Shown here: in pieces, positions 31,401 to 64,000 of the stretch
Layout of the letters: every line of letters starts with the position of its first letter
Numbering within the stretch: position 1 is the stretch's first letter
DNA from: Octopus sinensis
Lineage: Eukaryota
DNA length: 64,000 nt
Assembly: GCF_006345805.1 (NCBI RefSeq)
Contig: NC_043008.1
Coordinates: forward strand, 35,588,001 to 35,652,000
Direction: 5' to 3'
The notes under the pieces: generated by a model
What the model was told of the DNA's origin: nothing
The model's database searches: none
What the model saw: the letters and a program-made list of their open reading frames with translations, nothing else
Made by a program: the position numbers and the translations under genes

Positions 31401-31401
31401 A

Positions 31402-42098: not shown

Positions 42099-42138
<40 letters not shown>

Positions 42139-42141
42139 TAT

Positions 42142-42178
<37 letters not shown>

Positions 42179-42316
42179 CACATATCTATATATATATATA
42201 CACATATTACATACATAAACACATATTTTACATAAATATATGTACATACATATATAAATACATATGCATACATACATACATACATACATACATACATACA
42301 TACATACATACATACA

Positions 42317-42348
<32 letters not shown>

Positions 42349-42358
42349 AATACATACA

Positions 42359-44058
42359 TTTATTTTCCAGTCAGTTGTGTTAAGAATTATATAATATAAA
42401 TAATATAAATCTATAAATCTGATGTCTACAATAGATTATGTCCAAACTTCATTCCATTATTCCATTGTTTAACAGCCAATTATCATACAACCAATACAAA
42501 TGTTGTGTATATGAAAGACTTTGTATTCAATATCACTCCATGGTAAAGATGGTATTTGTTTAAACTGTTACATACATAGGCCATTGCAAAACAGCATAAG
42601 ATGGGGATTTTTTTTTCCAAGCAGTTGGTTTAAAAAACAAAACAAAACAAAACAAAAACATGACTCTGTAAACATATTAACTATTACTTATAAGCTTGAA
42701 TGCATTTACGTGTTAAAACACATTTTATAAATAAACACATTTATTAAATGTAATGCTTTTTATTATTACTTTATTGGTTTCAGCCCGTGGGCTGTATAAC
42801 CATGTTGGCATACTACTGTTGTATATAAAACAACAATACATTCAATCATGTTCACACACACACACACACACACACAGAGTTAAGTAACTAGATGTTACAT
42901 ATCTATAGCTAATACACTGTCTAAAAACACACAAGTCCACAAAAACAGGCACTTGTGTATTGCTTAATGAAATGGGTATATTATCATTATTAATAAAACA
43001 CGATACTATATACTTATATCAGCCATTTTGCCAATTGGTTTCATACCAAGATTTGAGAAAAATCCCAGCAATCATCAGAAAACGGTTGGATGGTACGGTA
43101 ATGCATGGGGTCAGCTTTTTCTGATGATTACTAGGATTTTTTTAACTCCTGGTATGGAACTAATTGATAAATTGGTTGTCAGAATATTCAGTTGTATTAT
43201 TAATAATAATATAGCAATACATATATACACACACCTTGTGAGTAAGGTATTGGAATCTTATATGTATACCATTCTGCCTAATTAATGGATCTACAAACGC
43301 AATATCCCTGCATACCTCACATCTATTTTCATTCCTCCACTTCACTCTCTATTTTGTATCTTATCTAAATTAACTATTGCATAACCATTTTCTCACATCG
43401 TTTCCGATGAAGGGATATAATAAATACCCTGGAAACAGCTGTAAGACCTTCTATTTATAAATGTTCTAAAATCATCACAGCCTTGGTTTTCTTATCTCAT
43501 TCTGAAAAACAATTTTATATATATATATATACGGACACATTAAAGACACAAGCTACCATTGCATTTGCTAAATAATTAAATATATTTGATCATACTTTGA
43601 TAGTTTTATTGTATTTTAATTCTAATCTCTGTCTAATTCATATATTTGATAATGGGGTGTTGAGTACAAAATATTCGAATGATTCACAAGTCTAAATCCA
43701 TTTCAAAATATTTCATTGTGTTTTTGAGGTAAAAGACATCATTTCTCATCATCTGACTTCTCTAACATTTGGGGATAGGTACCAAAGCATCTGAAAATAT
43801 TACTTGGCATTCTACATTTTAATTCTAATTTATTCCACACCATGCAATCAGAGCTAAGCACCAACTCACAATGACCCACATCATATCTTGTAGCCATAAA
43901 ACATTAAAAAATAACCTGTTATCAATTCTGATTCTTTTCTCGATGTTTGGATTGTTATGACAACAAAAAAGACATTTTTGCTGGCACCAAAAGTCCACGC
44001 TTGCATTTATAAAATAAAAAGCTAAAAAGCATACAGAAAATAGTTTTGAAGTCACTGT
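42359..44058 (-). other. Probable long AT-rich 3' UTR of the ASB gene
   Basis: Largely repeat-free AT-rich sequence after the stop codon. Minus-strand AATAAA at 43605-43610, 42770-42775, 42759-42764, 42740-42745 and 42359-42364. The cleavage site cannot be determined. Confidence 0.4.
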
Positions 44059-44907
44059 TTAAAGGAATAACAGATAGTTTTTTATGGTTAATGGAACTGG
44101 TAAGTTGCTTACTCTATTCTGTAAATAAACCCCTTGCATACATTTCCGTATAACAATACGACAATAAGATTCTAGAGATCGTGGTGTTTGCAACCAAGTA
44201 AGAATGGTTTTAATGGTAGAATTTGAACCAATACTGTTTGACATAGATTGATGTCTCTGAAAATCCGAGAGCCATTCCTCATTATCTAAATTGTAACCAC
44301 TTTCCAGGAGAAGTTTGCAGTTTTCTTGGTCTTTAATATGTACCAAATTAGCTAATGGTGTTCCTTGTCCAAAAATAACATGGTTATTAGAATTACAGCC
44401 ACTCTTTATGAGAGTAGAAATAACTTCTGAATGTCCATAGAAAGTTGCATAATGAATAGCTGAAGCTCGCAACCTGTCCACTGCGCAAGGATTTGCTCCA
44501 TTATTGAGCAAACTAGTAATAATATTCTGACAGCCAACCATTGAAGCAGTTATAATTGGTGTAACATTGTCCCGGTCAACACAATTCACATCAGCTTTGT
44601 TTTTTATCAGGTATAAGGTAACATTTTCCTGACGACCAATACATGCCCAATGAAGTGGTGTGCGGCCATAACAAGGATCCTTGTGGTTGATATAAGCACC
44701 AGCCTTCAGAAGATAATCAACGATATCCAGATTACCAGCATAACAAGCTCCTGCTAGAATCGTAGTGTTCTCTTGCTTGTCTGGGTTGTGGACGACTGAA
44801 TTGACACTCATTCCACTGCTGATCAGTTGCTGTACAGTGTGTAGATCATTACTGGATATTGCCTGAGACATTTGACCATCCCGGTCAAAGTTCACAGTGA
44901 ATGCCAT
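44059..44907 (-). CDS. Ankyrin repeat and SOCS box-containing protein (ASB family), about 282 aa from Met31 of the track ORF; all coding sequence seen lies in one exon
   Basis: About six ankyrin repeats (e.g. GRTPLHWACIGRQENVTLYLIKNKADVN, NVTPIITASMVGCQNIITSLLNNGANP) followed by a C-terminal SOCS box (TPRSLESYCRIVIRKC...SNLPVPLTIKNYLLFL). The first 23 codons of the 44997 ORF are intron-like and end in an acceptor (tttgttcttctttccacAG, AG at 44928-44927). First in-frame ATG after it is 44907. An upstream coding exon cannot be excluded. Confidence 0.9.
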   Translation of the reverse strand: MAFTVNFDRDGQMSQAISSNDLHTVQQLISSGMSVNSVVHNPDKQENTTILAGACYAGNLDIVDYLLKAGAYINHKDPCYGRTPLHWACIGRQENVTLYLIKNKADVNCVDRDNVTPIITASMVGCQNIITSLLNNGANPCAVDRLRASAIHYATFYGHSEVISTLIKSGCNSNNHVIFGQGTPLANLVHIKDQENCKLLLESGYNLDNEEWLSDFQRHQSMSNSIGSNSTIKTILTWLQTPRSLESYCRIVIRKCMQGVYLQNRVSNLPVPLTIKNYLLFL

Positions 44908-44926
44908 TGGAATTACGCACCATTTA

Positions 44927-44960
44927 CTGTGGAAAGAAGAACAAATACGTATTAAGATTA
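44927..44960 (-). promoter_or_regulatory. 3' splice acceptor preceding the ASB coding exon
   Basis: Minus strand reads taatcttaatacgtatttgttcttctttccacAG|TAAATGG: branch-like ttaat, pyrimidine tract, CAG. Confidence 0.75.
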
Positions 44961-45999
44961 ACATAACATAGCAAAACAAATTGTTTCTTATATACACAAA
45001 ATAATACTAATTACAAAACTAGTTGGAATATGAGCCCTTCTAACCAAGGTCAGATTATTTTTTAACCTTTTTATTCTAAATAGAACCTCTGTCTTTTCCG
45101 TCTCTGCTAAAATATTCCAGATTCTTCTAAATTTATTGATCAAGAACCATCTCTAATTTAACACTACCACCTGGTACACTTTGGGTGGTTTTAACAGAAT
45201 CCACTCAGTTACTAGAATTTGAACCAAGTCTGAGAATATTGAGATCTTCCTCACTTTCTATCAAAAAAGTCGCAGGTTCTGCTCTACCAATTTTTCACTA
45301 AACCATGAAAAGACCCTTGTCATAGCCAGCTTGTTTTCTCCTATCATAGTACTAAATACCATAGGACTGGATACCATTCAAATCCTTTATCCATAGAATT
45401 GTAATACATTTTGAAAACCTATTTGGAATACAAACTTACAATACAAACTAAATTTTTAAAGAATCAGACTCAGTTATTTCTGTTCTTCTATCTGGAAAGA
45501 CCTCAGTTGGCTGCAAATGCAGTTTTTCTCATCTGGTTGCTTAATAAAAATGAAAGTTTAATGTCTCATTCCTTATTTTGTGAAAGCAGCAATCCAGCTG
45601 GTTGATTTGGGGCTTATCACTGCAATAAGAAGCATCTTTATAATTCTAATTTTGCACCATTTACCAGGGAACCTAAATTCTTTTCTACCAGGAGCTAATA
45701 TTTATGATTTTGTGTGCAGGTAAGAATATCTGAATTCTTTTTTATATAGAGTTTATAAATTCAATTCTTCATCACAGAAATAGTGTGATGTCATAAAAAA
45801 AAAAACATTGTACATATTGTCATAAAACAGACATATCTAATAAAAATACAGCAGCAGTGGGGGGGGGGGCGCATGTGCATGCAAACACACATGCATGTGC
45901 ATGGGTGTATTGAAACTTCATAGTTGAACAACTGTGTTTTATATTCATTATTTCCATGACAATAATATAGGGTAGGATGGTTTTAGAAAGATTTAGATA

Positions 46000-46417
46000 A
46001 GGCAGCAAGATGGCAGAAACATTAGCACACCCGGTGAAATGCCTAGCAGTATTTCGTCTGCCGTTACATTCTGAGTTTAAATTCCGCTGAGGTCGACTTT
46101 GCCTTTCATTCTTTTGGGGTCGATAAATTAAGTACCAGTTATGCACTGGGGTCGATGTAATTGACTTAATCCCTTTGTCTGTCCTTGTTTGTCCCCTCTG
46201 TGTTTAGCTCCTTGTGGGTAGTAAAGAAATAGGTATTTCGTCTGTCTTTACGTTTTGAGTTCAAGTTCCGCTGAGGTTGACTTTGCCTTTCACCCTTTCG
46301 GGGTCGATTAAATAAGTACCAGTTATGCACTGGGGTCGATATAATCAACTTAATCCCATTGTCTGTCCTTGTTTGTCCCCTCTATGTTTAGCCCCATGTG
46401 GGCAATAAAGAAATAAG
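46000..46417 (+). mobile_element. SINE family B with tandemly duplicated body (about 183 bp period)
   Basis: ctgagtt.aa.ttccgctgagg..gactttgcctttca...ggggtcga...aagtaccag occurs twice. Other copies at about 11555-11740, 12990-13130, 16035-16225, 26150-26360, 33795-33935, 49045-49275, 53757-53960, 54933-55135. Confidence 0.75.
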
Positions 46418-46855
46418 AAAGATTTGGATATTTACAAAATTGGGAACCACTGTTTTACATCTAGATCCTTTTTCCAGTTAATAGATCAGACAATTGAGCC
46501 AGTTTCTTAACTTGCCATAATCAAATCAACCCCAGAACTTGCTTTTTTTAAAAGTCTGGTACTTATTCAATCCACCCTTTTTGCTCAACTTGCTAATTTT
46601 GTGGCGATGGACACAAAAACAAAACAAAGCTGTCAATTAGTGGTGGGAGGACTAACACAAAGACATACAGACACACACCACAAACACACACATGATGGGC
46701 TTCTTTCAGTTTCCATCTACCAAATCCACTGACAAAGCTTTAGTTGACCAAGGGCTGTAATAGAAGGCACTTGCGCAAGACGATGCAGCAAAACTAAGCC
46801 CAAGGCCACATTGTTGGGAAGCAAACTTCTTAGCTCCAAAGCTATGCCTTCACCT

Positions 46856-46891
<36 letters not shown>

Positions 46892-47914
46892 ACACACACA
46901 CACACATATGCATACACACACATGCACATACACACATATTCACCAATGCTAGCGTTGGTTGTAAAGGTCGACAACTCTCAGAGGTCAACTGTTACTTCGT
47001 CTGTAAAACTCATAAGAGCTGACCTCAGTCTCCCTAGTATGTCTTCCCCAGTTTTCCCCTTCTGTTACTATATTTTAGTATCAACAAATGCTACATTTTT
47101 CACCTTACACTCATTATCTATTCAAATCACGTAAACATCCCACTATGCTGACTAGTGTGTGTATATTGTCTAATGCAGCTTTAGTTGAATTATGCTCACT
47201 CTGTTTTCTAAGTTAATGACAGATATCTTACAGATCATGCATGCTTGCATGAATTAGTTTCCATCTTCCACAGATTTGCATTCAATGTCCATGTTCTGTC
47301 ACATTCTTGTAGCATCACACTTTTATATATGTTTTTGATAGATTTTCATTTGTTTTGTTGTTGGTTTTAGTTTTTTCCTGTACAGGAGGCAAAGTCTTTC
47401 ATCACCAACAGATGCAGCAGCTTCACTGATTTCACCTATCTCCCAATCCAAACAATTCTTTTTTTAATTGCAACCATCTCCAGTAGTAATTGCACATCAA
47501 CAATTCCATAAGGAGTGGCTGTGTGGTAAGTAGCTTGCTTACCAACCACATGGTTCTGGGTTCAGTCCCACTGCATGACACCTTGGGTAAGTGTCTTCTA
47601 CTATAGCCTTGGGCCAACCAAAGCCTTGTGAGTCGATTTGGTAGATGGAAACTGATTATGTAACCACGTGGACTGTTGACAATTTTTTTCGTCCATCTTC
47701 CTTTTCTCTTGGACTTTCCTCTGTCTCCTGTTTCTGAAGAAGAGCTTTGCTTGAAACATATAATACCCCTTTCTTTCCTTCTCAGAGTGTCTTATTAATA
47801 CTTTTCATGTACCGCATGCTTACTTTGTTGTTTTTTTCTTGTCTTTTTTTTACTCTTAAATCCTTAAAAATGTTTTAGCCCGAAGGCCGCGGCCATGCTG
47901 GGGCACCACCGCTG

Positions 47915-47954
<40 letters not shown>

Positions 47955-48384
47955 ACAGGCTTCTTTTAGTTTCTGTCTACCAAATCTACTCACAAGGATT
48001 TGATCAGTCTGAGGCTATAGTAGAAAGCACTTGCCCAATGAACCATGCAGTGAGACTGAACCTGGAACCATGTGGTTGGAAAGCAAGCTTCTTACCATAC
48101 ATCCACACCTGTGCCTACCATTATGAAAGAAGATGTGCTATCACTATATAAGATTTCTCAAGAATGGTTATTTCTTTATTAAGAATAATGAATATTACTT
48201 ACATTGGATATATATTTATGCTTATAGAGTGAAATATATTAATACATAGGTAGCAGACTTTATCTTTGAGCATTTAAACCAACCATATTCAGCCCAAATA
48301 TTCTATCTCTTTTATGTTCAAACCAGCCAGATCTGATCTCTCATACCTAACTGACAATTTCATTCTAAAAATAAACAATCAGAG

Positions 48385-48722
48385 AACATGATGGAGTAAG
48401 TTCAGAGAACTTTTACTTCTGTTGGCAACCAAAGACCTCTCTCTGCAAGTGAAGGGAAGATTGTATGATGTATGTGTATCAACTGCAATGCTACATGGTA
48501 GTGAGACATGGGTCCTGAATGCAGAGGACATGCAATGGTTGGAAAGGAACAAAGCAGGTATGCTCCACTGGATGTGTCATGTTAGTGTGCATGGGTGACA
48601 GAGCACTGGTGTATCGAGAGAGAAGCTGAGCATAAGAGGAATTATATGCTGTGTCCAAAGGAGGAGATTATGTTGGTTTGGTCATGTGATGTAGATAGAT
48701 GAAGACAATTACTTAAAGAAGA
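48385..48722 (+). mobile_element. RTE-clade LINE internal fragment (RT C-terminal region)
   Basis: WSKFRELL..L...LSLQVKGRLYDVCVSTAMLHGSETW...LERNKAGMLHWMC...RRRLCWFGHVM, with stops. Confidence 0.8.
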
Positions 48723-49959
48723 ACCAATATACATACATTAATAGGTGCAGGCATGACTATGTGGTAAGAAAGTTGCTTCCCAAGCATGTAGTCTTGGGTT
48801 CAGTTCCACTGAACAGCACACTGGGTACTATGGACTCAGGGTGACCAAAACCTAGTGCGTATACTTGACAGACAGAAACTGAAAGAAGCCCAACAAATGT
48901 ATACATGTGTATGTGTGTGTCCTTGCATTTCCCCTCACCACTGCTTGAAAACCAATGTTGGTTTGTTAATATTACCATAACTTAGTAGTTCAACAAAAAG
49001 AGATTAACAGAATAAGTACCATACTTATACAGAATAAGTACCAGGCAGTGAGCTGGCAGAAACATTAGCACGGTGGATGAAATGGTTAGCGGTATTTCGT
49101 CTACCGCTACGTTCTGAGTTCAAATTCTGCCAAGGTCGACTTTGCCTTTCATCCTTTCGGGGTCAATTAAATAAGTACCAGTTACGCACTGGGGTCGATA
49201 TAATCGACTTAATCCCTTTGTCTGTCCTTGTTTGTCCCCCTCTGTGTGTAGCCCATTGTGGGCAGTAAAGAAATAAGAATAAGTACCAGACTTTTAAAAA
49301 AAATAAGTACAGAGATTGATTTGTTTGAACCAGACTCTTCGAGGTGATGCTCTAGCATGGCCACAGTCCAAAGAATGAAACAAGTAAAAGATAAAAGATG
49401 AAACATTGAACTTACATATGCACAAATTTAAAGAATTAGAAATAGAACTATCAAGGAATTGAAATCCCCATGAAATATACCAAAAGACATGATACAAGAA
49501 TTATGCCGCCAATGCAACATACAAACATCACAACACATACTTTGTTTGATCAAGCCTGGAGTTATGAAAGGCAAAGTTGACCTCGGCAGGATTTGAACTC
49601 ATAACATATAAGATATATGACTAAACACTGTTGCAGGCATAAAAATGGTCGGGAATATCAAAGACAAGAATAAAATACCAACTGAACAAATGAATATTTT
49701 AAGCCAAATGAAAGCTTTGAATTAGACCAAAAGAAAATTGTCAAGATATATGCGTGCGCGTGCACATGTGTGTGTGTGTGTTTGTGTGTTTGTGTGTGGG
49801 TGTGTGTGTGTGTGTGTGTGTACACATACACACACATTGGAGCAAACGCTGGCAGACATTGCCATTTCCCAACAGTGGCAGAGAAAATGAAATGAATAAA
49901 ACAACAGTAACAATACTATCAACCACAATGAGGATAAAGCTACTACCACCACCATTAAT

Positions 49960-50005
49960 AACAACAACAACAACAACAACAACAACTATTATTATTATTA
50001 TCATT

Positions 50006-50036
<31 letters not shown>

Positions 50037-50177
50037 CCATACAAACCTTTTACAATCAGACACATGTAGTATTTACTGTGGTTGCAGTCAGATTGAAATG
50101 AAGGGAAAAGGTGACACATTTGCAATACAATGTCCAGCAAAATGAAATTACTATTAGCATTATAACATATATTATTA

Positions 50178-50208
<31 letters not shown>

Positions 50209-50315
50209 CATTATTTTTATTATCATCATTATTATTATTATTATTATCATTATTATCATTATTATTATTATTATCATTATTATTATTATTATTATCATTA
50301 TTTTTATTATTATTA

Positions 50316-50346
<31 letters not shown>

Positions 50347-50458
50347 CATTATTATTATTATTATTATCATTATTTTTATTATCATTATTTTATTATTATT
50401 ATTATTATTATTATTATCATTATTTTTATTATCATTATTATCATTATTTTTATTATCA

Positions 50459-50492
<34 letters not shown>

Positions 50493-51029
50493 CATCATCA
50501 TTATTATCATTATTTTTTATTATCATCATCATTATTATTATTATTATTATTATTAGTATTTCTGTAATTTTGTCTGTAAGTGTTTGCATTGTTTGTTTTC
50601 TATTTTGTTTGTTACTTGTTTCTTGTTTTTTTTTGTTATTTGTTTGCATGTCCATGTAACTAGGAAGAACAGAATTACTACAATAATAAGAAAAAAAACC
50701 TTCATCATCGTTCACATCACCATGGCCATGACCACTACCACCACTACCAACACCACTACCATCATCATCATCGCCATCATTACCATCCCCACAAAAACTA
50801 ACAGTACCAGCCCCATCATTTTTAATAGTAGTAGTAGCAGCAGTAGTAGTAGTTGTAGTAGTCACAGCAGCAGCAACAGCAGCACCCTCAGCAACAGTAG
50901 TGGTGGTAGTAGTAGTAGTGGTGGGTGGTGATGGTGGTGGTGGTAGAAGTAATAGTGGTCATGGTGGTGGTAGTAGTTGTAGTAGTAGTAGTGGTGGTGG
51001 TGGTTGTAGCGGTGGTGGTGCTGCTGGTG

Positions 51030-51072
<43 letters not shown>

Positions 51073-51240
51073 CCTCAGCAGCAGTAGCCTCAGAGTCATT
51101 ATCATCATCACCATCAGCATCATGTCCAGACATCATAGTAATTCATCAACATTGTCATTCTCACCGTCATTGCCAACGTCGTCATCATCGCCATCATTGT
51201 CGTCGTCATCATCGTCATTGTCGTCGTCGTAATGATCGTC
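49960..51240. repeat. Trinucleotide microsatellite field (AAC, ATT/ATC, CAT/ACC, AGT/GGT, GTC)
   Basis: Direct reading; source of the poly-I, poly-T and poly-S pseudo-ORFs. Confidence 0.95.
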
Positions 51241-51367
51241 ATGAATTGACAGCCAATGGACACAAAATGGAGGGAATAATATAAAAAAAAGTCACAAAGT
51301 AAAAAAAAATAAACAAAAACTAAACTAACCATAAAAAAAGCCAACACTGTAAAACACACACATACAG

Positions 51368-51398
<31 letters not shown>

Positions 51399-51695
51399 GT
51401 ATGTAAGTATGTGAGTATGTATATAAAGGTATGGCTAAGCTAGCAGCTGTAATATGGAAAATGGCCAAACATATGTTGTATGTTTGATTGAGACCATGTA
51501 TAATCAGTTTGCTGTTTGCTGTTCTGTTTCTTGTTATTATGTGGAAATATTCTCAGCCAGGCATTTGGCTGTTTATTCTGCCTCACCTTTTCTGATGTCA
51601 ATCTTCTGATACGAAATTAATACTGCTCGAAGAATATATATAATGAAATTATTATGAACGTACGTCAGACTCACTCTCTGTGTGTATGTGTGTGT

Positions 51696-51726
<31 letters not shown>

Positions 51727-53337: not shown

Positions 53338-55678
53338 ATATATATATATATATACACACAATGGGCTTCTTTCAGTTTCTATCTGCCAAATCCACTCGCA
53401 AGGCTTTGGTTGATCTGGGGCTGTAGAAGAAGACACTTGCCCAAGGTACCATGCAGTGAGACTGAACCCAGAACCCATTAGGAAGCAAACTTCTTAACAC
53501 ACATCCACGCCTCCACCACCCATAATTAACTAAATTACCTACATTACCACCACCCCATCACTAATTAGATCATCCACTTAATAACAACTTCATAATTAAT
53601 TAGGTCACTTATTTTGAAAATAACCACCCCAGTACTTATTAGCTTGCCTACTTTCACTACATGTACTCCATGACTAATTGGGTCACACACACCCCACCAC
53701 CCTCTAATTAGGTCACATAGAAAGCAGCAATAACCTGCTCTGTCCAATGAGCAATCATTTTCTACTCTAGGCACAAGGCCTGAAATTTTGGGGGAGGGGA
53801 CCAGTCAATTAGATCGACCCCAGTATGCAACTGGTACATAATTTATTGACCTCGAAAGAACGAAAGGCAAAGTCGACCTCAGTGAAATTTTAACTCAGAA
53901 TGTAAAGACAGATGAAATACCACTAAGCATTTCGCCAGGCATGCTAACGTTTCTGCCAACACTTAAGTATTATACATCTGATTCCTCTGTTACCCATTTT
54001 TTCTCTTAACCCTTTTGTGCTTTTATTCAGACACACAAGCATAACCCATCCAGGGGAACATGTCTGCTTCATTTCTTTCTAGCTTTCACTGATCTTCTAC
54101 ATTCAAAGCCCATTTTTCACTATCACACAACATTCCATTTCATACATTAACATCATACATATTATCCTTTCCTCTTTGTGAGAAACCTTTAGTTTACAGC
54201 AGAAACAACAACTCCTTCAACATTTTCTACATTTTCCACTTTCCCTCTCAACACTATCATTGGAAACAACTACCCCCACCCACAGCTGATTCAATCACCT
54301 TGGTAATAAGAGCCATCAATTCTCCTTGTAGGGACTCTCAAGGCATTAGGCATCTGAACAGATATCCTTACTGTTGACTTTATATCATCCACTTATGAGA
54401 AGAAAGGGTCTGCTTCTCTATCGGCCGGACCCTGATCCACACACAGTTCCTGTGCATCCATGAAGAGTTGTAGGATCACAGGCAGGCTGACATACATTAC
54501 AGATATATATATAATATATATATATATATACACACAATGGGCTTCTTTCAGTTTCTATCTGCCAAATCCACTCGCAAGGCTTTGGTTGATCTGGGGCTGT
54601 AGAAGAAGACACTTGCCCAAGGTACCATGCAGTGAGACTGAACCCAGAACCCATTAGGAAGCAAACTTCTTAACACACATCCACGCCTCCACCACCCATA
54701 ATTAACTAAATTACCTACATTACCACCACCCCATCACTAATTAGATCATCCACTTAATAACAACTTCATAATTAATTAGGTCACTTATTTTGAAAATAAC
54801 CACCCCAGTACTTATTAGCTTGCCTACTTTCACTACATGTACTCCATGACTAATTGGGTCACACACACCCCACCACCCTCTAATTAGGTCACATAGAAAG
54901 CAGCAATAACCTGCTCTGTCCAATGAGCAATCATTTTCTACTCTAGGCACAAGGCCTGAAATTTTGGGGGAGGGGACCAGTCAATTAGATCGACCCCAGT
55001 ATGCAACTGGTACATAATTTATTGACCTCGAAAGAACGAAAGGCAAAGTCGACCTCAGTGAAATTTTAACTCAGAATGTAAGACAGATGAAATACCACTA
55101 AGCATTTCGCCAGGCATGCTAACGTTTCTGCCAACACTTAAGTATTATACATCTGATTCCTCTGTTACCCATTTTTTCTCTTAACCCTTTTGTGCTTTTA
55201 TTCAGACACACAAGCATAACCCATCCAGGGGAACATGTCTGCTTCATTTCTTTCTAGCTTTCACTGATCTTCTACATTCAAAGCCCATTTTTCACTATCA
55301 CACAACATTCCATTTCATACATGAACATCATACATATTATCCTTTCCTCTTTGTGAGAAACCTTTAGTTTACAGCAGAAACAACAACTCCTTCAACATTT
55401 TCTACATTTTCCACTTTCCCTCTCAACACTATCATTGGAAACAACTACCCCCACCCACAGCTGATTCAATCACCTTGGTAATAAGAGCCATCAATTCTCC
55501 TTGTAGGGACTCTTCAAGGCATTAGGCATCTGAACAGATATCCTTACTGTTGACTTTATATCATCCACTTATGAGAAGAAAGGGTCTGCTTCTCTATCGG
55601 CCGGACCCTGATCCACACACAGTTCCTGTGCATCCATGAAGAGTTGTAGGATCACAGGCAGGCTGACATACATTACAG

Positions 55679-55680
<2 letters not shown>
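53338..55680. repeat. Direct tandem duplication, two units of about 1176 bp
   Basis: Identical ORFs at 53565 and 54741. By eye about three differences between units (1 bp A deletion near 55080, T/G near 55323, 1 bp T insertion near 55513). Junctions lie in (TA)n. Confidence 0.95.
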
Positions 55681-55717
<37 letters not shown>

Positions 55718-56379
55718 TATATGTATATATATATATATATATACACACACACATATATGTATATATATATATAGATAGACAGATAGATAGATAGATAACA
55801 CTGAGAATGTGTGTGTGTCAGTCTGTCTGTCTATCAAACTGATTTCATTGATATTTTACACATACTTACTCAGGTCCATGGAGTGTTATGGGCCAAAAAA
55901 AATTTCAGCTTTTTGCCTAATGCAAGCCCAGAGCAATCGCTTATTTCTTACACTGTTTTGATATTACATGACAAAAGTGAAACAATAACATTATTATATA
56001 GCTAGGTATGGTCATAGATACTGTCAACATTTTAGGAGTAGTATAAAGTAACTGTCTATAAAGAAGGCTGTGTAATGGAAGACTCCAAATCAAGATGTTA
56101 ATTACCAGCTAAAGGGGCAAGACGCTAAAAAAGCCTATGATGTTAAGACAGAAGAAATTTTACCATGGAGTACTATGGGTGATTGTTTATACACAATATT
56201 CTTATGTTGTATAAAGATAAAATTGAGGATTATCAAAAATGATATCATAACCAAATCCTGTTGCATAGCCGCAATCACATAACTGAAGCAAGTAAAACAA
56301 TGAAAAAACTATGCCATTTTAATCCCTATCATCTCTGCTAGTATATATATATATATATAATATATATATATATATACAT

Positions 56380-56412
<33 letters not shown>

Positions 56413-56484
56413 CATACACACACACATATATATATATACACATACACACACACACACACACACATAGATAGATAATTAGATAGA

Positions 56485-56532
<48 letters not shown>

Positions 56533-57058
56533 AAGATAGATAGATAGGTAGATAGATATGTATATATATATGTGTGTGTGTGAATATATATATATATATA
56601 TATTTATGGAAATATAAATATGGATATATATATACATATATATTGATATGTGTGTGTGTGTGTGTGTGTGTATGGATATATATATATTATAGCCTCAGGC
56701 CAACCAAAGCCTTGTGAGTGGATTTTCTACATGGAAACTGAAAGAAAACTATCATATATATGTGTATATTTGTGCGTTTGTGTGTGTGTGTCTGTGTTTG
56801 TACCACCATCATTGCTTGACAAACAATGTTGCTGTTTTTACATTCCAATAACTTAGTGGTTTGGCAAAAGACACAGATAGAATAAGAACTAGGCTTACAA
56901 CGACTAAATACTACGGGTGATTTATCTGACCAACAGCGTTGCTCCAGCATAGCCGCAATCACATGACTGAAGCAAGTAAAACAATGAAAAACCTATGCCA
57001 TTTCAATCCCTATCATCTCTGCTAGTATATATATACATACATACGAACATACATACAT

Positions 57059-57106
<48 letters not shown>

Positions 57107-57108
<2 letters not shown>

Positions 57109-57590
57109 TCATCATCATCATCATCATCATCATTTAGCGTCCGCTTTCCATGCTAGCATGGGTTGGACGGTTCAACTGGGGTCTGTGAAGCTGGAAGGCT
57201 TCGTCAGGCCCAGTCAGATCTGGCAGTGTTTCTACGGCTGGATGCCCTTCCTAACGCCAACCACTCCATGAGTGTAGTGGGTGCTTTTTACCTGCCACCC
57301 GCACAGGTGCCAGACAGAGCTGGCAAATGGCCACGAACGGATGGTGCTTTTACGTGTCACCAGCATGGGGGCCAGGTGATGCTGGCAACGGACATGAACG
57401 GATGGTGCTTTTACGTGCCACCAACACGGGGGCCAGACATAGCTGGCAAACGGCCATGAACGGATGGTGCTTTTACGTGTCACCGGCACGGGGGCCAGGC
57501 GAGGCTGGCAACGGACATGAACGGATGGTGCTTTTACGTGCCACCGACACGGGGCCAGACAGAGCTGGCAAACGGCCACGAACACACACA
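57107..57590 (-). mobile_element. RTE 3' UTR copy with expanded internal 61-62 bp tandem repeat
   Basis: Shares ccatgctagcatgggtt, tttctac.gctggatgcccttcctaa.gccaaccactcc and the (CAT)n tail with 59334-59660. ggatggtgcttttacgtg occurs at 57339, 57400, 57462 and 57523. Confidence 0.78.
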
Positions 57591-57819
57591 CATATATATA
57601 TATATTCTTTTTTACATATACATATGTATTATTTTATGTGCTCTTTGCTACATGTATATACACACATGTATATACTGAGTTCAGGTTTTAAAGTTTCATG
57701 ACAAAATTTTTGCTTTCAAAACATGTATGTGTGTTTGTGTATGTGTAAGTACTCCTTATAATAGGTTTTCCTTTTTCATTTCTTTCAAATTTTACCTTTG
57801 TTGTGAGGGGGCTGGCACT

Positions 57820-57853
<34 letters not shown>

Positions 57854-58419
57854 CTCTCTCTCTTGTGTACACACACACACTCACACGTGCATGCACACAC
57901 TGCATGAATATAAATTTATAATAGATAATTTCATAATCTATTTTATATTCCCCTGTACATTGCAAGCATTTTGTTTGTTTTTGAGTTCTATTTCCGTTGC
58001 TTTTAAATGATCCATTACTTCATCTCCTATGATCATCTTCAATTCTTGACATTTATTGGATTAGACCAGCTGCCATCTTGTCAACAATAAGGTTTTCATT
58101 GAGGGTGATTTCCACAAATTCCTCTTCTCACATTTTCCAAAATACACTACAAGAATATCTTAAAATCTGCATCTTTTTTTTTTCAGTTTTTTTTTGTTTC
58201 CTTTTTATGTCAGTGTTTATTTTTTATCCTTTACTTGCTTCAGTCATTGAACTGCAGCTATGCTGGAGCAACTCCTTGAAGTGTTTAGCGTAACAAACTG
58301 ACCCCAGTCAGTACTTATTTTTTAGGTCTGCTTCTTATTCTAGCAATCTGTTTTACCAAACTGCTAAGTTTCAAAGATGTAAACAAACTGGCACTGGTTG
58401 CTAAGCAATGAGAGGAGAA

Positions 58420-58466
<47 letters not shown>

Positions 58467-58848
58467 CTTTTATCTTTTACTTGCTTTAGTCATTGGACTG
58501 CAGCCATACAAGAGCAACACTTTGAAAAGGTTTTAGTCAGATGAACCAACCTGAGTGCTTTTTCTGTTTTTCAGTCATTCTCTTTTGTGGAAGTGCTAAG
58601 TTAGAGGGATGTAAACAAACCAATACCCATGAGAGAGGGGAGCTAAGACAAACAAAAACACACACACACAAACACACATGCACACACACACACACTTGCA
58701 TGCATATGAAATGGAAGGGTTTCCAGCATTGCACTGGATTTATAAGGGTTTGCAAAACATCTGAGAAGTTCCTGCAGTTTCTGCATGAGGGGCAAAGCAC
58801 CTCTGATATTTATTTTACCATTTATGTGTGTGTGCGTGTGTGTGTGTG

Positions 58849-58880
<32 letters not shown>

Positions 58881-59333
58881 ATGTGTATGTGTGTGTGCAT
58901 GTGTGTGTGTATGTGTGTGTCTTCATGCATGTGAGATGGGGCTTCCACACAATTTCCATCTCTCAAATTCATTCACAAGGCATCGGTCAGCCAAGAGCTC
59001 TTTAAATTTGAAACAATCACCATCTCCTAACTGGCTGCTGTCCATCAATTCTTCTTCTATGCTGACTGTCATTGGTAGCTTTAAAAAGTACAGTGCTGCA
59101 CTGAATTGGTAAAGCATCATATTAAATGCTCTAAGTCTTTTGAACTACGACCTTTTATGCTTTCTGTTCAGATCCTAACAAGGTACACTTTCTTACTCAG
59201 CCTTATCAGAGTTGATAAAATGAAGTACACATTATATTCTGTGTTGATTTCATTAGCACATTTCTAGATATAAATAAAACTATAACAGGATAGAAAAGAA
59301 TTCCTCCAAAGTAAGTACCTCCATATTCTTCAA

Positions 59334-59995
59334 CATCATCATCATCGTTTAACGTCCGTTTTCCATGCTAGCATGGGTTGGACTGGAGTCTGGGAAGCCA
59401 GGAGGCTGCACCAGGCTCCAGTCTGATCTGGCGGTGTTTCTACAGCTGGATGCCCTTCCTAATGCCAACCACTCCATGAGTGTAGTGGGTGCTTTTTACA
59501 TGCCACCGGCACAGGGGCCAGGGGAGGCTGGCAACAGCCACAATCAGTTGATGCTTTTTACATGCCACCGGCACAGAAGCCAGCCAAGGTAGCGCTAGCA
59601 TCAGCCACGTTCGGATGGTGCTTATGTGCCACCGGCACAGGTATCGCAACTACAATTCCATTTGATTTTTATTTTGATGTTGATGTACTTGACTCATTAG
59701 GTCTCCTCAAGCACAGCAGGTCACCCCACAATCCAAGATAAGCACTGCAGGCCATCCTGCAGCCCATTCAAGGTACTTTGAATGGGCTGGGGCTGGTTGT
59801 GTGAAGCAGGTGTAAGATACAGCCATGAACTCACTTTATTTGTCGGGTCTTCACAGTCACAGCATATTTCCATAGGTCTCGGTCTTTCGTCATTGCCTCT
59901 GTGAGGCCCAACATTCAAAGGTCATACTTGACCAACTCATCCCACGTCTTCGTCTTCCTGGGTCTACCTCAACCCTGGATTCTTTCAACTGTTTG
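59334..59995 (-). mobile_element. RTE LINE 3' end (last codons, 3' UTR, (GAT)n tail)
   Basis: G*GRPRKTKTWDELVKYDL*MLGLTEAMTKDRDLWKYAV, then UTR with TTAGGAAGGGCATCCAGC and a (GAT)n tail. Confidence 0.82.
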
Positions 59996-60535
59996 AGAGT
60001 TTCAAATAACAATGTTACAAATAAAGTGCAAAACTAGGGATGCAGCATGCTACATGAAGAGCAAAGAGTGAAACAGAGGGACATTGACACAGTGTATATA
60101 GAAGAAATGGCCCTTAAGGGGCCATATGTGAATGACTCAAAGTGAATTGGGATGTGTATAACTGAAATAGGCCAACATCTATAGTCAACCAACATGCAAT
60201 AGATAAACATGAGAACTGAGGAAATGTCAAAATTATAATCCTTTCAGCATATTCATGTGATCTGATACTCAAAGAGTCCACTGAAAGAATGCACATACCA
60301 GAAAGAGAAGACAAACTCACCTATATACTCAACGGAAGTGGGAAAAATAACAGATCCACCACCACCATCACCACCACAGCCCAGACAGGTTAACTAAGCA
60401 ACAACTAACAACAAAAGTGTGTGTATGTACATATATATATATATACACACACACACATACACAGAGTTTTAGTTGTGTGCGAATGTGTGTGGGGGGATAT
60501 ATGCATGTGTGTGTGTATCTATATATAAATCCTTT

Positions 60536-60933
60536 TATTCTTTTATTTGTTTCAGTCATTTGACTGTGGCCATACTGGAGCACCACTTTTAGCACTTATT
60601 CTATCGGTTTCTTTTGCCAAACCACTAAGTTACAGGACGTAAACACACCAGCATCGATTGTCAAGCGATGGTGAGAGGACAAACACAGACATACAAATAC
60701 ATACATATATACATACATACATATATACATACATACATATATATATAGATATAGATATATATATACGACAGGCTTCTTTCAGTTTCCGTCTACCAAATCC
60801 ACTCACAAGGATTTGGTGGACCTGAGGCTATAGTACAAGACACTTGCCCAAGGTGCCACACAGTGGGATTGAACCTGGAACCATGTGGTTCATAAACAAG
60901 CTAGTTACCACATCACACAGCCACTCCTGTGCC
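60536..60933 (-). mobile_element. SINE family A, full-length copy, partly CpG-decayed
   Basis: Colinear with 12066-12477. Confidence 0.8.
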
Positions 60934-61801
60934 TATATATATATATATATAAATATAAATATACGATGATGATGATGATGATATATATATACATACATAT
61001 ATATATATATATGTGTATATATATATATATTTATATATATATATATATACATACATATATATACATACACACACACACCCATACAGCACTCATTTATTTT
61101 AATCAAAAATATTAAAAGTTACAATAAAAGTAATATCATAGCTATGATAAATGTATTATTATGATTAATGACAGAAAATATCAAAAATGAGGCTAACTAA
61201 TTTAAGGTGCTAATAATTTTAATGAATTAAATATTATAACATTGAGGTGACACCTACTGTATACCTACATTTTCACACCCCCACCCTTTATATATATATA
61301 CATATATATATATAAGTAAGGTTTATCACCACTTAGACATGGCTGTTCTGTAGGAACCCATGTTACTGCAATTTTTAACCCCAGGAAGATACCTCCTTCT
61401 GCTAGTTAGTCAATACAATTTGTACCATATATATTGCAAGCAAAGGAGTGAAGCCCTACCATCTTCTAGCCATAAGATCAGACCCTGGTAGGATGAAAAG
61501 ACTAAGTTGCCCTTGATAGGATTTGAACATGGAGTACAGAGAACGGGAACAAATACTGAAAGGTATTGTATTCAACACTCTAATGATTGCCTCCACATAC
61601 ACACACATATATTATATATATATATATACACACACAACCATACATACATGCACATGTACACACACACACACACATACACATATATATTTTATATATATAT
61701 ACACACACACAACCATACATAGATGCACATGTACACACACACACACGCACACATATATTGACAAATATATCCAAATTATATATATGTGTGTATATATATA
61801 C

Positions 61802-61834
<33 letters not shown>

Positions 61835-62222
61835 TGTATCTATGTATGTATGCATGTTTGTATGTATGTATGTATGTATGCATGTTTGTATGTATGTATG
61901 TATGTATGTATGTATACACACACACTCTCTCTCTCTCTCTTTCTCTCATTTCCCCCTCTCCCCTCTCTGCTAGTCTAGGTGTGTTCCTCTCACTGGGGAT
62001 GTCATCAAGTGAAAATTCATTTAGGCAGGTGATCCGTCATATCAACAATGGTGATGCCCACACATGGTGAGTTATTATCATTCTCTCCTCAAAGAAAACC
62101 CACATGGGAACCACAAGGAAACTTCAAGGAAGTGAATAATCATTATCTCTGCCACTTCATCATTATTAAGGGCTTCTCCTGACTGCCATAGATTGTATAA
62201 TTATATATATACATATATATAC

Positions 62223-62280
<58 letters not shown>

Positions 62281-63344
62281 TCTCCCTATGTGGAGATGAA
62301 ATGCAAATACAACTCATCACCCCCCGACCGTTCACATTCTCTTGCCTCCATCCATAGTCCTGACAACACTTACTCATCATTACTCAGACTATTACAGCAA
62401 TGATGAAACTTCTTTGCTCAGCTTCCAAGCTAACCACCCCACCCTGTGCCATGGAATCTACCACTGTCAATCCTTTCCCCACTTCTACCATAGAGATAGC
62501 CTCGCCCCAATTACCTCACAAAAAAATATGGAGTAAACTGCAACATTTACAAGTAATTAAATATATTACCGTGTCGTCATAGAGGGCTGATGTGATGTTT
62601 GCAAGTCACTGAGAAACAGGGAAGAAGGCAACCTGCCTAAGACAGCAGGAACTCTGAATAAAATTCTTCACAGGAGAGATGTTGCCTCAGAAAGCTACAG
62701 TGAAGAAAACCTGGCAAAGAGGGAAGCACACAGAAAAAAAAATTGATTCAGTGTTGAGGAGATACATCAGCCCCTACCAGACAATATTTTTAATGAAGGT
62801 GGGATGATCAAATGCACTTGTACTATGCTATAAAGTGGTTTGTGAAAGGAAGGACATAACAACTGTATAAAAACAAAGTGATGCTTAAAACATAACAGTA
62901 AAATCAATAATTGTGAATGCATGGTTAACACTTACCATGTTAATTCTATACATAGTAGTTGGGTGGCCAGGCTGGAGCAGCTGGTCGTATCATCATCATC
63001 ATTTTAATGTCTGCTTTTCAATGCTTACATGGGTCAGACAAAATTCCGTGAGGCAAATTTTCTACAGCTGGATGTCCTTCCTGTAGCTAGTCAATTCTTT
63101 CCAAGAAAGGTAACATTTCCCCATGGTCAAAAATTTCTTTCACATAAGATTGGAAACAAATGACACTACTTATTAGATATTGACATTTGTTTGCAATTAT
63201 CATGTGATGCTGAAGAAAGGAGGCACACATACACACACACACGTGTGTGTATGTGTGTGTGTGTAACAGGCTTGTTTTTAGTTTTTGTCAACCAAATCCA
63301 CTCACAAGGCTTTGGTCAGCCTAGGGTTATAATTATTATTTATT

Positions 63345-63648
63345 TATGCCCCTTTTTCAAGCCTAGCCAGGCTCATGGTTCCAGTTTCCCGGTTTCTGAG
63401 GCGTATGTGTTCCCATCAGCTGGATGGGATGCCAGTCCATCGCAGCGTTACTCAAGAAACAGGAAAAGAGTGAGAGAGAAAGTTGGGGCGAAAGAATACA
63501 ACAGGGGTCGCCACCATCCCCTGCCGGAGCCTCGTGGAGCTTTTAGGTGTTTTCGCTCAATAAACACACACAATGCCTGGTCTGCGTATCAAAACCGTGA
63601 TCCTCCAACCGCGTGTCCACTGCCCAAACCACTGGGCCATTGCACCAC
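63345..63648 (-). mobile_element. SINE family C (CpG-decayed copy)
   Basis: Colinear with 40680-40975; many differences are CG to TG or CA. Confidence 0.8.
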
Positions 63649-64000
63649 CACAGGGTTATAATAGAAGACATATAAATATGAATGAGTCAGTTATTGGTGG
63701 TGAGGAGTGTAAATGTAATGAATATCCTTCCCTGACATGGACAGAAAAATAGAAGTGCGGAAATGCTGCCCTGCAAGGTTGGTGAATGAGAGGGATGTGT
63801 AAGAGAAAGAAGGTCAACACCAACTTGACCCAACAAAAAAGATGACCAGTCATTTAAAGTGAGAGCTGTATGACATAACTAAAGTAAATGATGTATGAAT
63901 AAGAGATACAAAAGGACCACAAACTGGAAAGGCTTTGAATGTAGAAGGTGGAAAAAAATTTGTTAGAAAGAAGCACAACCATAAAATATATTCCTTCACA

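What the first reader, a model, noticed from the sequence alone, without database searches (positions are those of the whole stretch)
42100..64000. CpG-decay boundary near 42 kb: footprint of a germline-methylated gene body ending at the ASB 3' end
Seen: copies of the same repeat keep CpG left of about 42 kb and lose it to the right. SINE C at 40680 versus 63345 shows about ten CG to TG/CA changes (ggacgggacgccgg/ggatgggatgccag, aacgcccgg/aatgcctgg, gtccgctg/gtccactg, ttgcgcc/ttgcacc). SINE A reads cgacgggc...ccgtc...cacgcag at 12313 and 36677 but caacaggc...ctgtc...catgcag at 47952. Both internal stops in the RTE at 59.9 kb are TGA at expected Arg (CGA) codons. Established: molluscs have mosaic methylation concentrated in gene bodies, and 5mC deaminates to T. 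Inference: 42.4 kb to the window end is one long-methylated transcription unit, probably the ASB gene with an intron of at least 19 kb and its promoter outside the window. CpG-rich inserts there (57107-57590, 49045-49275) would be younger arrivals.
Basis: partly seen in the sequence, partly recalled or inferred. Interest (0 to 1): 0.7.

Follow-up and report, generated by a model that had tools for sequence, protein, structure and literature searches.

The report
CpG-loss footprint of methylated octopus gene
About 2 kb past the end of an ankyrin/SOCS-box gene in this octopus sequence the DNA switches sharply from CpG-poor to CpG-rich, which is the expected and already well-known mutational scar of long-term germline DNA methylation over a gene body.

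Summary
CpG observed/expected is 0.81 over 1-42,070 and 0.30 over 42,071-64,000. There is one dominant change point at 42,070, GC content is the same on both sides, GpC is normal, and TpG/CpA is in excess on the right.

The window is Octopus sinensis. Three age-controlled tests show that CpGs decay faster on the right:
- Repeat copies lose CpG 5.5 times faster per unit of non-CpG divergence (p about 1e-14).
- CpG transitions between O. sinensis and O. vulgaris affect 38% versus 17% of CpGs (p = 7e-8), with equal non-CpG rates.
- CpG-rich patches inside the domain are lineage-specific or nested insertions.

The gene is on the minus strand. Its terminal exon is 44,926-44,059, the intron is 17.6 kb, and an ATG-bearing exon lies at 62,709-62,570, inside the window. 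Depletion continues at least 8.6 kb past the window end, so the promoter probably does lie outside.

A distant homologue locus shows the same step 4 kb past its stop codon. The Argonauta orthologue does not. Actual 5mC was not measured.

This is a clean local example of known mosaic gene-body methylation in octopus, not a new kind of feature.

The parts
1..42070 (.). CpG-retaining flank (o/e 0.81). It is transposon- and microsatellite-rich, and no host exon was detected.
41100..42120 (.). Boundary zone of the CpG step. The change point is 42,070 in O. sinensis (support 41,780-42,120). The O. vulgaris change point maps to about 41,130.
42099..42359 (.). Compound (CA)n/(TA)n/(TACA)n microsatellite immediately right of the change point.
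41727..41981 (+). 84-aa ORF inside a CpG-intermediate block (41.26-42.0 kb, o/e 0.51). It looks like a transposase C-terminal fragment. That is inference from a motif only, with no Pfam support.
42071..64000 (.). CpG-depleted domain (o/e 0.30). It continues without a break to at least window-equivalent 72,580 in L002.
44059..44926 (-). Terminal coding exon of the ankyrin-repeat/SOCS-box gene. The acceptor AG is at 44,928-44,927 and the stop codon is at 44,061-44,059.
44927..62569 (-). Intron of 17,643 bp, filled with decayed SINE and LINE copies.
62570..62709 (-). Upstream exon ending ATG ACG ACA CG|gt, with the ATG at 62,580-62,578. It is preceded by a polypyrimidine tract and a cag acceptor at about 62,712-62,710. 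The 5' limit of the exon is inferred.
47511..47655 (-). SINE-A copy with 5 of 5 consensus CpGs decayed at only 3.7% non-CpG divergence.
47918..48118 (+). SINE-A copy with 8 of 8 consensus CpGs decayed.
60727..60936 (+). SINE-A copy with 5 of 8 consensus CpGs decayed to TG/CA, 2 kept and 1 otherwise changed.
12271..12482 (+). SINE-A copy on the left side with 7 of 8 CpGs kept.
36643..36845 (+). SINE-A copy on the left side with 7 of 8 CpGs kept.
40670..40973 (.). SINE-C copy on the left side (20 CpGs).
63336..63651 (.). SINE-C copy on the right side (13 CpGs). Ten sites that are CG in the left copy are TG/CA here.
57034..57615 (.). CpG-rich family-D element with 61-bp tandem repeats. It is absent at the orthologous site in O. 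vulgaris, so it is a young lineage-specific insertion.
49043..49279 (+). Family-B repeat copy (o/e 0.82) nested inside an older SINE-A copy (48,738-49,397). It is present in O. vulgaris.
59831..59971 (-). RTE-type LINE C-terminal remnant with in-frame TGA codons at 59,971-59,969 and 59,917-59,915.

Best explanation
The window is Octopus sinensis chromosome sequence. From about 42.1 kb to beyond the right edge it lies inside a transcription unit whose CpGs have been methylated in the germline for a long time. That unit is the minus-strand ankyrin-repeat/SOCS-box gene, probably including upstream exons outside the window. 5-methylcytosine deaminates to thymine, so every CpG in the domain is lost to TpG/CpA about 8 times faster than other cytosines mutate. 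This applies to exons, introns and passenger transposons alike. The domain has reached its low equilibrium CpG content.

Methylation stops 2-3 kb past the stop codon, presumably near the transcript end. The intergenic transposon-rich DNA to the left is largely unmethylated and keeps its CpGs. Elements that inserted recently into the domain are still CpG-rich because they have not had time to decay.

Shown here: the step, the CpG-specific and strand-symmetric excess decay after controlling for age, the gene structure, and the recurrence at a homologous locus. Inferred: that the cause is 5mC, that it acts in the germline, and where the transcript starts and ends.
For: (1) The step is CpG-specific. 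CpG o/e is 0.81 versus 0.30, GpC is 1.0 on both sides, GC content is equal, and TpG/CpA is in excess on the right.

(2) Repeat copies were scored against a CpG-aware consensus. For SINE-A, 11 of 35 CpGs have decayed on the left (non-CpG divergence 10.1%) versus 36 of 38 on the right (13.1%), p = 1e-8. For family B, 15 of 53 have decayed on the left (17.3%) versus 35 of 60 on the right (9.3%), p = 0.002. The fitted decay constant per unit of non-CpG divergence is 2.5 (1.6-3.5) on the left and 13.7 (10.5-17.6) on the right, likelihood-ratio p about 1e-14. All 8 SINE-A CpG sites show both TG and CA outcomes among the right-side copies, so the decay happened in place and was not inherited from a CpG-poor master copy.

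(3) In the O. sinensis versus O. vulgaris alignment, CpG<->TpG/CpA differences affect 102 of 268 CpGs on the right and 40 of 241 on the left (odds ratio 3.1, p = 7e-8). Non-CpG transitions per column are 0.0135 versus 0.0129 (p = 0.76). After correcting for CpG gains, the loss per CpG cytosine is 0.145 on the right (8.4 times the non-CpG C>T rate) and 0.067 on the left (3.6 times). The right side sits at its predicted equilibrium, with an observed CG/TG ratio of 0.092 against 0.086 predicted. The between-species rate predicts a repeat decay constant of 13.7 for the right side, identical to the fitted value.

(4) The decay is strand-symmetric: 58 TG versus 45 CA, p = 0.24.

(5) The CpG-rich 57.0-57.6 kb element is missing in O. 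vulgaris, which carries a different CpG-rich SINE at the same site.

(6) Gene model. Ankyrin and SOCS_box domains are present. The protein is identical to O. sinensis/O. vulgaris proteins P0121 and P0122. The exact exon-end match is at 62,580-62,568. The 18,522-bp coding span equals that of L002, which is 100% identical to the window.

(7) Depletion persists through L002 positions 1-8,580 (o/e 0.10-0.37). The O. bimaculoides orthologue has a coding range of 102.9 kb.

(8) The L004 homologue locus is depleted through the exon, with a step 4,031 bp after the stop codon. The log-likelihood gain is 28.6, against a maximum of 13.5 in block shuffles.

(9) Published octopus methylomes put 5mC on the bodies of a subset of highly expressed genes and find it nearly absent from intergenic transposons (PMC9476566).
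Against: - No 5mC measurement was available for this locus or species, so methylation is inferred from its mutational signature.
- The Argonauta hians orthologue is not depleted (o/e 0.7-1.0, terminal exon about 0.9), although the neighbouring Aldedh gene is. The state is therefore not conserved across octopods.
- The left flank also shows some CpG hypermutability (3.6 times baseline) and is not at equilibrium, so part of the contrast reflects younger sequence on the left. The 2.6-kb LINE at 34-36.6 kb is lineage-specific.
- The between-species counts are unpolarised, and the left sample is only about 7.3 kb.
- The repeat consensus was built from 9-11 local copies.
- Transcript ends are not known. 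There are eight AATAAA signals between the stop codon and 41.3 kb.
- The 5' limit of the domain was not reached, so one gene versus several is unresolved.
Confidence: 0.8

Rival explanations
1. The methylated domain is real but is not the ankyrin/SOCS-box gene alone. It could be a larger multi-gene or read-through domain, or the body of another overlapping transcription unit, for which this gene's 3' end merely happens to be the last piece.
For: Depletion runs at least 10 kb upstream of the ATG with no CpG-rich promoter gap. The Argonauta orthologue on its own is not depleted, while the gene upstream of it is. The O. bimaculoides coding range of 103 kb suggests far-upstream starts.
Against: No other conserved exon or Pfam-bearing ORF was found on either strand between 45 kb and 72.6 kb. 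No Aldedh exons lie within 10 kb upstream in Octopus. The L004 locus shows the step at the same relative place, downstream of the homologous exon. The ATG exon has an upstream acceptor, which fits long transcripts of the same gene.
Confidence: 0.13
2. The step reflects sequence age and composition, not a regional difference in mutation. On this view the left side is simply built of younger, CpG-rich transposon insertions and the right side of older sequence.
For: The left side contains lineage-specific and intact elements: the LINE at 34,047-36,648 is absent from O. vulgaris, and there is an 844-aa ORF. The left side holds more CpG than its own mutational equilibrium.
Against: Right-side copies have equal or lower non-CpG divergence yet far more CpG decay. 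The decay-constant ratio is 5.5, p about 1e-14. CpG transitions since the O. sinensis/O. vulgaris split differ 2.2-2.3 fold, with identical non-CpG rates. Every 2-kb window on the right is depleted.
Confidence: 0.04
3. A CpG-directed mutational process other than 5mC deamination lowers CpG on the right. Candidates are transcription-associated damage or repair bias in a transcribed region, or biased gene conversion raising CpG on the left.
For: The depleted region is transcribed, and no 5mC data were available.
Against: The decay is strand-symmetric: 58 versus 45. GC content, GpC and non-CpG transition and transversion rates are the same on both sides. The effect is confined to CpG, with reciprocal TpG/CpA gain. 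Octopus has a working DNMT1/UHRF1 system with gene-body 5mC (PMC9476566).
Confidence: 0.03

Closest known systems
Mosaic gene-body methylation of invertebrates and its CpG-depletion signature. It has been described genome-wide for Octopus bimaculoides (Macchi et al. 2022, PMC9476566), and CpG o/e is used as a proxy in honeybee, insects and cnidarians (PMC2975444, PMC5915941, PMC8857923).
   Same: Low CpG o/e with TpG/CpA excess is confined to a transcription unit. Intergenic DNA and intergenic transposons keep their CpGs. Passenger transposons inside the gene decay along with it. The step falls close to the 3' end of the gene.
   Different: Nothing is different in kind. Here the evidence is local and sequence-only. 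It adds age-controlled repeat clocks and a two-species substitution spectrum, which give matching rate estimates. The gene is an ankyrin/SOCS-box gene rather than a classic housekeeping gene, and its Argonauta orthologue lacks the signature.
Vertebrate CpG islands and shores in a globally methylated genome.
   Same: Sharp transitions in CpG o/e are produced by differential germline methylation and 5mC deamination.
   Different: The polarity is reversed. In vertebrates the default is methylated and depleted, with short protected islands at promoters. Here the default (42 kb of intergenic DNA) is CpG-retaining and the gene body is the depleted block. The CpG-rich patches inside the domain are young insertions, not protected islands.
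ASB (ankyrin repeat and SOCS box) substrate-receptor family of Cullin-RING E3 ligases.
   Same: The encoded protein has N-terminal ankyrin repeats and a C-terminal SOCS box.
   Different: The best named vertebrate hit, ASB4, is only 27% identical. NCBI names the octopus protein after gankyrin/PSMD10 because of its ankyrin repeats. No specific ASB orthology was established, and the protein's function has no bearing on the CpG finding.

Membership tests
Historically germline-methylated gene body (mosaic invertebrate methylation) | CpG o/e is depleted relative to the flank, with TpG/CpA excess, and GpC and GC content are unaffected. | tested here: met
   CpG o/e is 0.30 versus 0.81, GpC is 0.99 versus 1.00, GC is 0.364 versus 0.360, and TpG/CpA is 1.39/1.51 versus 1.23/1.17.
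Historically germline-methylated gene body (mosaic invertebrate methylation) | There is heritable CpG-specific hypermutability inside the domain relative to outside, with equal non-CpG rates. | tested here: met
   Between species, 38% versus 17% of CpGs differ by a transition (p = 7e-8). Non-CpG transitions are 0.0135 versus 0.0129 per column. The gain-corrected rates are 8.4 versus 3.6 times baseline.
Historically germline-methylated gene body (mosaic invertebrate methylation) | Passenger repeats inside the domain decay faster than copies of the same family outside it, after controlling for age. | tested here: met
   Decay constants are 13.7 versus 2.5 per unit of non-CpG divergence, p about 1e-14. 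Mixed TG and CA outcomes appear at every SINE-A site.
Historically germline-methylated gene body (mosaic invertebrate methylation) | The domain limits coincide with a transcription unit: it begins after the TSS and ends near the transcript end. | tested here: inconclusive
   At the 3' side the step lies 2.0-2.9 kb after the stop codon, and 4.0 kb after it at the L004 homologue. At the 5' side the limit was not reached within 10 kb upstream of the ATG. No transcript data were available.
Historically germline-methylated gene body (mosaic invertebrate methylation) | 5mC is present on the domain's CpGs in germ cells. | not testable with these tools
   No methylome track was available. The supplement search of PMC9476566 found only a different ASB8-like gene.
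Historically germline-methylated gene body (mosaic invertebrate methylation) | The signature is shared by orthologues. | tested here: inconclusive
   Present in O. vulgaris (L003) and at the L004 homologue. Absent in Argonauta hians (L001).
ASB (ankyrin repeat + SOCS box) proteins | Ankyrin repeats are followed by a C-terminal SOCS box. | tested here: met
   Pfam Ank_2 E = 3.3e-42. SOCS_box E = 7.9e-11, at residues 271-310 of the 312-aa ORF.
ASB (ankyrin repeat + SOCS box) proteins | Binding to Elongin B/C-Cullin5 and E3 ligase adaptor activity. | not tested
   Biochemical, and not relevant to the CpG finding.

The most novel reading that the evidence does not exclude
The methylated state of this gene is evolutionarily labile and tied to transcript architecture rather than to the gene itself. 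In Octopus, and in the taxon behind L004, far-upstream promoters drive long transcripts (a coding range up to 103 kb in O. bimaculoides). On this reading those transcripts place the whole locus in a domain of 30 kb to more than 100 kb, whose 3' edge has stayed fixed to within about 1 kb. In Argonauta the gene is compact (13.6 kb) and has escaped methylation. If so, this locus would be a natural experiment on what sets gene-body methylation and its boundaries in molluscs.
Probability: 0.2. Interest if true: 0.45.

Novelty: already known. Interest (0 to 1): 0.25.

Why it matters
The phenomenon is textbook: 5mC deamination depletes CpG where the germline is methylated. Octopus is already known to methylate a subset of gene bodies and to leave intergenic transposons alone.

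The value here is practical.
- The step gives a sequence-only marker for the 3' limit of a germline-methylated transcription unit.
- It shows that interspersed repeats can serve as internal clocks. Two independent estimates agree that a CpG dinucleotide decays about 13.7 times per unit of neutral divergence inside the domain.
- It flags a gene whose methylation state differs between Octopus and Argonauta.

Tried and rejected
- I looked for aldehyde dehydrogenase exons, the upstream neighbour in Argonauta, in the window and in the 8.6-kb extension by tblastx. None were found.
- I searched for the O. bimaculoides upstream coding exons (MFCLNQLKQRQWVSKGIC and the X1 N-terminus) in 72.6 kb. There was no credible hit.
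- I tried to fetch O. bimaculoides DNA as an outgroup. P0001 and P0123 are not on record, and the gene range for P0124 is too long for DNA to be returned. The substitution counts therefore stayed unpolarised and were corrected with an equilibrium argument.
- Looking up the window's own 282-aa product failed. The 292-aa isoform worked.
- A first greedy BLAST chain for the two-species alignment dropped too many segments, so I replaced it with a filtered MAFFT alignment.
- A supplement search of PMC9476566 for the methylation class of the orthologue found only an unrelated ASB8-like transcript.
- ARAGORN and Rfam found nothing in the window.
- Poly(A) signals are too frequent in this AT-rich 3' region to place the transcript end.
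- I considered and rejected the idea that the CpG-rich patches at 57 kb are protected internal CpG islands. The element is absent at the orthologous site in O. vulgaris.
- I considered a CpG-poor subfamily master as the source of the right-hand SINE copies. I rejected it because TG and CA outcomes are mixed at every site.

Full report
**1. The observation**

A 2-kb sliding window shows CpG observed/expected of about 0.7-1.05 everywhere from 1 to 42 kb and 0.15-0.53 everywhere from 42 to 64 kb. Pooled values are 0.807 for the left (1,101 CpGs) and 0.302 for the right (218 CpGs). With simple repeats masked they are 0.83 and 0.30. GC content is 0.360 versus 0.364. The GpC control dinucleotide is 1.00 versus 0.99. 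TpG and CpA are in excess on the right: 1.39/1.51 against 1.23/1.17.

A binomial change-point scan of P(G|C) finds a single dominant break at 42,070. Its 2-log-likelihood support interval is 41,780-42,120 and the log-likelihood gain is 131.8. The best further break inside either half gains only 5-6.

- The SINE-C pair has 10 sites that are CG on the left and TG/CA on the right, against 1 the other way.
- The quoted SINE-A strings are exact.
- The two internal stops of the LINE remnant are TGA.

**2. What the sequence is**

The ORF at 44,059-44,997 on the minus strand carries ankyrin repeats and a C-terminal SOCS box. Its 282-aa core is identical to an Octopus protein (P0122) and 98% identical to O. 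bimaculoides isoforms.

The terminal exon starts after an acceptor AG at 44,928-44,927. Isoform X1 of O. sinensis and O. vulgaris begins MTTRK, which predicts an upstream exon ending ATGACNACNCG|GT. The only match in the window is at 62,580-62,568 on the minus strand.

The span 62,580 to 44,059 is 18,522 bp. This is exactly the coding range of locus L002 from O. sinensis GCA_006345805.1. L002 is 100% identical to window 34,059-64,000 and extends 8,580 bp beyond the right edge.

So the intron is 17,643 bp and lies inside the window. The ATG exon is preceded by a polypyrimidine tract and a cag acceptor, which implies further 5' exons upstream. In O. bimaculoides the longest isoform has a coding range of 102.9 kb. 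Its upstream exons are not found within window-equivalent 72.6 kb.

**3. Extent of the domain**

L002 positions 1-8,580 (window-equivalent 72,580-64,001) have o/e of 0.10-0.37 in every 1-kb bin. The depleted domain is therefore at least 30.5 kb long and has no CpG-rich promoter-like gap within 10 kb upstream of the ATG.

The orthologous O. vulgaris locus L003, which has about 2-3% substitutions, shows the same step. Its change point maps to window position about 41,130. The boundary is best described as a zone at 41.1-42.1 kb, 2.0-2.9 kb past the stop codon. This zone contains a CpG-intermediate transposon-like block (41.26-42.0 kb, o/e 0.51) and a compound microsatellite (42,099-42,359).

**4. 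Is it faster CpG decay, or only older sequence?**

Three tests control for age.

(a) Repeat copies. For the SINE-A core, left copies have lost 11 of 35 consensus CpGs at 10.1% non-CpG divergence. Right copies have lost 36 of 38 at 13.1% (p = 1e-8). One right copy, 47,511-47,655, has lost 5 of 5 at only 3.7% divergence. For family B, left copies have lost 15 of 53 at 17.3% divergence and right copies 35 of 60 at 9.3% (p = 0.002).

I fitted P(decay) = 1 - exp(-k*d), where d is non-CpG divergence from the consensus. This gives k = 2.5 (1.6-3.5) on the left and 13.7 (10.5-17.6) on the right, with likelihood-ratio p about 1e-14. At all eight SINE-A CpG sites the right-hand copies show both TG and CA outcomes. 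The losses therefore happened independently in place and were not inherited from a CpG-poor source copy.

(b) Between-species substitutions. I used a filtered MAFFT alignment of O. sinensis and O. vulgaris.

| Measure | Right of 42,070 | Left of 42,070 | Test |
|---|---|---|---|
| CpG<->TpG/CpA differences | 102 of 268 CpGs | 40 of 241 CpGs | odds ratio 3.1, p = 7e-8 |
| Non-CpG transitions per column | 0.0135 | 0.0129 | p = 0.76 |

Unpolarised counts are inflated by CpG gains where TpG and CpA are abundant. I estimated the gains from T-to-C rates in non-G contexts. The corrected loss per CpG cytosine is 0.145 on the right (8.4 times the non-CpG C-to-T rate) and 0.067 on the left (3.6 times).

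These rates predict an equilibrium CG/TG ratio of 0.086 on the right, against 0.092 observed. On the left they predict 0.18, against 0.44 observed. The right is at equilibrium and the left is not.

The between-species rate converts to a decay constant of 13.7 for the right, identical to the repeat-based estimate. For the left it converts to 6.1, against 2.5 from repeats.

(c) Young insertions. The CpG-rich element at 57,034-57,615 is not present at the orthologous O. vulgaris site. O. vulgaris instead carries a different CpG-rich SINE there, with 17 CpGs. The CpG-rich family-B copy at 49,043-49,279 is nested inside an older, decayed SINE-A copy, although it predates the species split.

The decay is also strand-symmetric, with 58 TG against 45 CA (p = 0.24). 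This is as expected for symmetric CpG methylation and not for a transcription-strand effect.

**5. Comparative evidence on the link to this gene**

L004 is a more distant homologue locus (59% protein identity) from an unnamed ENA assembly. It is depleted (o/e 0.07-0.56) for 10 kb upstream, through the exon, and for 4 kb downstream. It then steps up to 0.7-1.0. The change point is 4,031 bp after the stop codon, with a log-likelihood gain of 28.6 against a maximum of 13.5 in 200 block shuffles.

In contrast, the Argonauta hians orthologue L001 has a 13.6-kb gene and is not depleted (o/e 0.7-1.0, terminal exon about 0.9). The aldehyde dehydrogenase gene upstream of it is depleted (o/e about 0.5). 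No aldehyde dehydrogenase exons occur within 10 kb upstream of the Octopus gene.

The signature therefore recurs at the 3' end of this gene in independent genomic contexts but is not universal.

**6. Mechanism and comparison with what is known**

Published methylomes of O. bimaculoides make four relevant points (PMC9476566):
- Fewer than 10% of CpGs are methylated.
- 5mC clusters on the bodies of a distinct set of highly expressed genes.
- Intergenic DNA and transposons are largely unmethylated, although repeats carry slightly more methylation than repeat-free intergenic DNA.
- The pattern is similar across tissues.

CpG depletion as the evolutionary signature of germline methylation is standard (for example PMC2975444, PMC5915941, PMC8857923).

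The locus fits this picture completely: a methylated gene body in which passenger repeats decay, an unmethylated transposon-rich intergenic flank with weak residual CpG hypermutability, and a boundary just past the gene's 3' end. What remains inferred is the presence of 5mC itself, that it is germline (this follows logically, because the substitutions are inherited), and the transcript limits.

**7. Rivals**

- A pure age or composition explanation is excluded as the sole cause by section 4. It contributes a little, because the left side holds lineage-specific insertions and is above its equilibrium CpG content.
- A non-5mC CpG-directed process is unlikely, given the strand symmetry and the identical non-CpG spectra on the two sides.
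- The main open alternative is that the domain is larger than this gene, for example a multi-gene or read-through domain. The 5' limit was not reached and Argonauta differs. Against it, no other exon was found between 45 and 72.6 kb, and the ATG exon looks internal.

**8. Verdict**

The feature is an ordinary, already well-described kind of genomic signature. Interest is low to moderate.

Noticed in passing
window 34,016-36,648: An intact 844-aa RTE-type LINE ORF (endonuclease plus reverse transcriptase) lies here. The whole 2.6-kb block is absent at the orthologous O. vulgaris site, and both ends abut GTTTATATATAT. This looks like a recent, possibly still active, lineage-specific insertion. 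Its own CpG o/e is only 0.53 although it sits on the CpG-rich side.
   Followed up: partly
window 53,338-55,711: A 1.18-kb tandem duplication with 99.67% identity between the two units. Only one unit aligns in O. vulgaris, so it is either a very recent duplication or an assembly artefact.
   Followed up: partly
window 57,034-57,615 and L003 14,472-14,867: The same microsatellite-flanked site carries different young CpG-rich insertions in the two species: a family-D element with 61-bp tandem repeats in O. sinensis and a SINE-C-like element in O. vulgaris. This suggests an insertion hot spot.
   Followed up: partly
L001 (Argonauta hians) 10,001-23,589: The orthologous gene body is not CpG-depleted (o/e 0.7-1.0), while the upstream aldehyde dehydrogenase gene is (about 0.5). 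The inferred methylation state of this gene differs between Octopus and Argonauta.
   Followed up: partly
L004 1-21,089: A homologue locus from an unnamed ENA assembly (59% protein identity) shows the same depleted-to-rich step 4.0 kb past the stop codon. The taxon could not be identified with the tools.
   Followed up: partly
window 31,400-42,070: The CpG-rich flank still shows CpG transitions at about 3.6 times the non-CpG C-to-T rate and holds more CpG than its mutational equilibrium. This is compatible with low-level methylation of intergenic repeats and with young sequence.
   Followed up: partly
window 48,400-49,500 versus other intervals: Divergence between O. sinensis and O. vulgaris is very uneven. 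It is about 1 mismatch per kb here and 30-80 per kb in other intervals of the same locus.
   Followed up: no
window 51,071-51,445: A CpG-rich patch (o/e about 1.1-1.2) inside the depleted domain, made of a 24-bp CGTCGTCATCATCGT-type tandem repeat. It is present in O. vulgaris at 87% identity. CpGs here may be renewed by repeat turnover.
   Followed up: no
window 9,941-60,936 (SINE-A copies) and L001: The SINE-A core is shared with Argonauta at 80-89% identity, so this is an old octopod SINE family. ARAGORN and Rfam recognise no tRNA or other RNA family in the window.
   Followed up: partly
window 30,127-31,065 and 6,254-6,997: A mariner-like ORF (HTH_48 plus Transposase_1) and a Tc1/Tc3-like transposase ORF lie on the CpG-rich side.
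   Followed up: no
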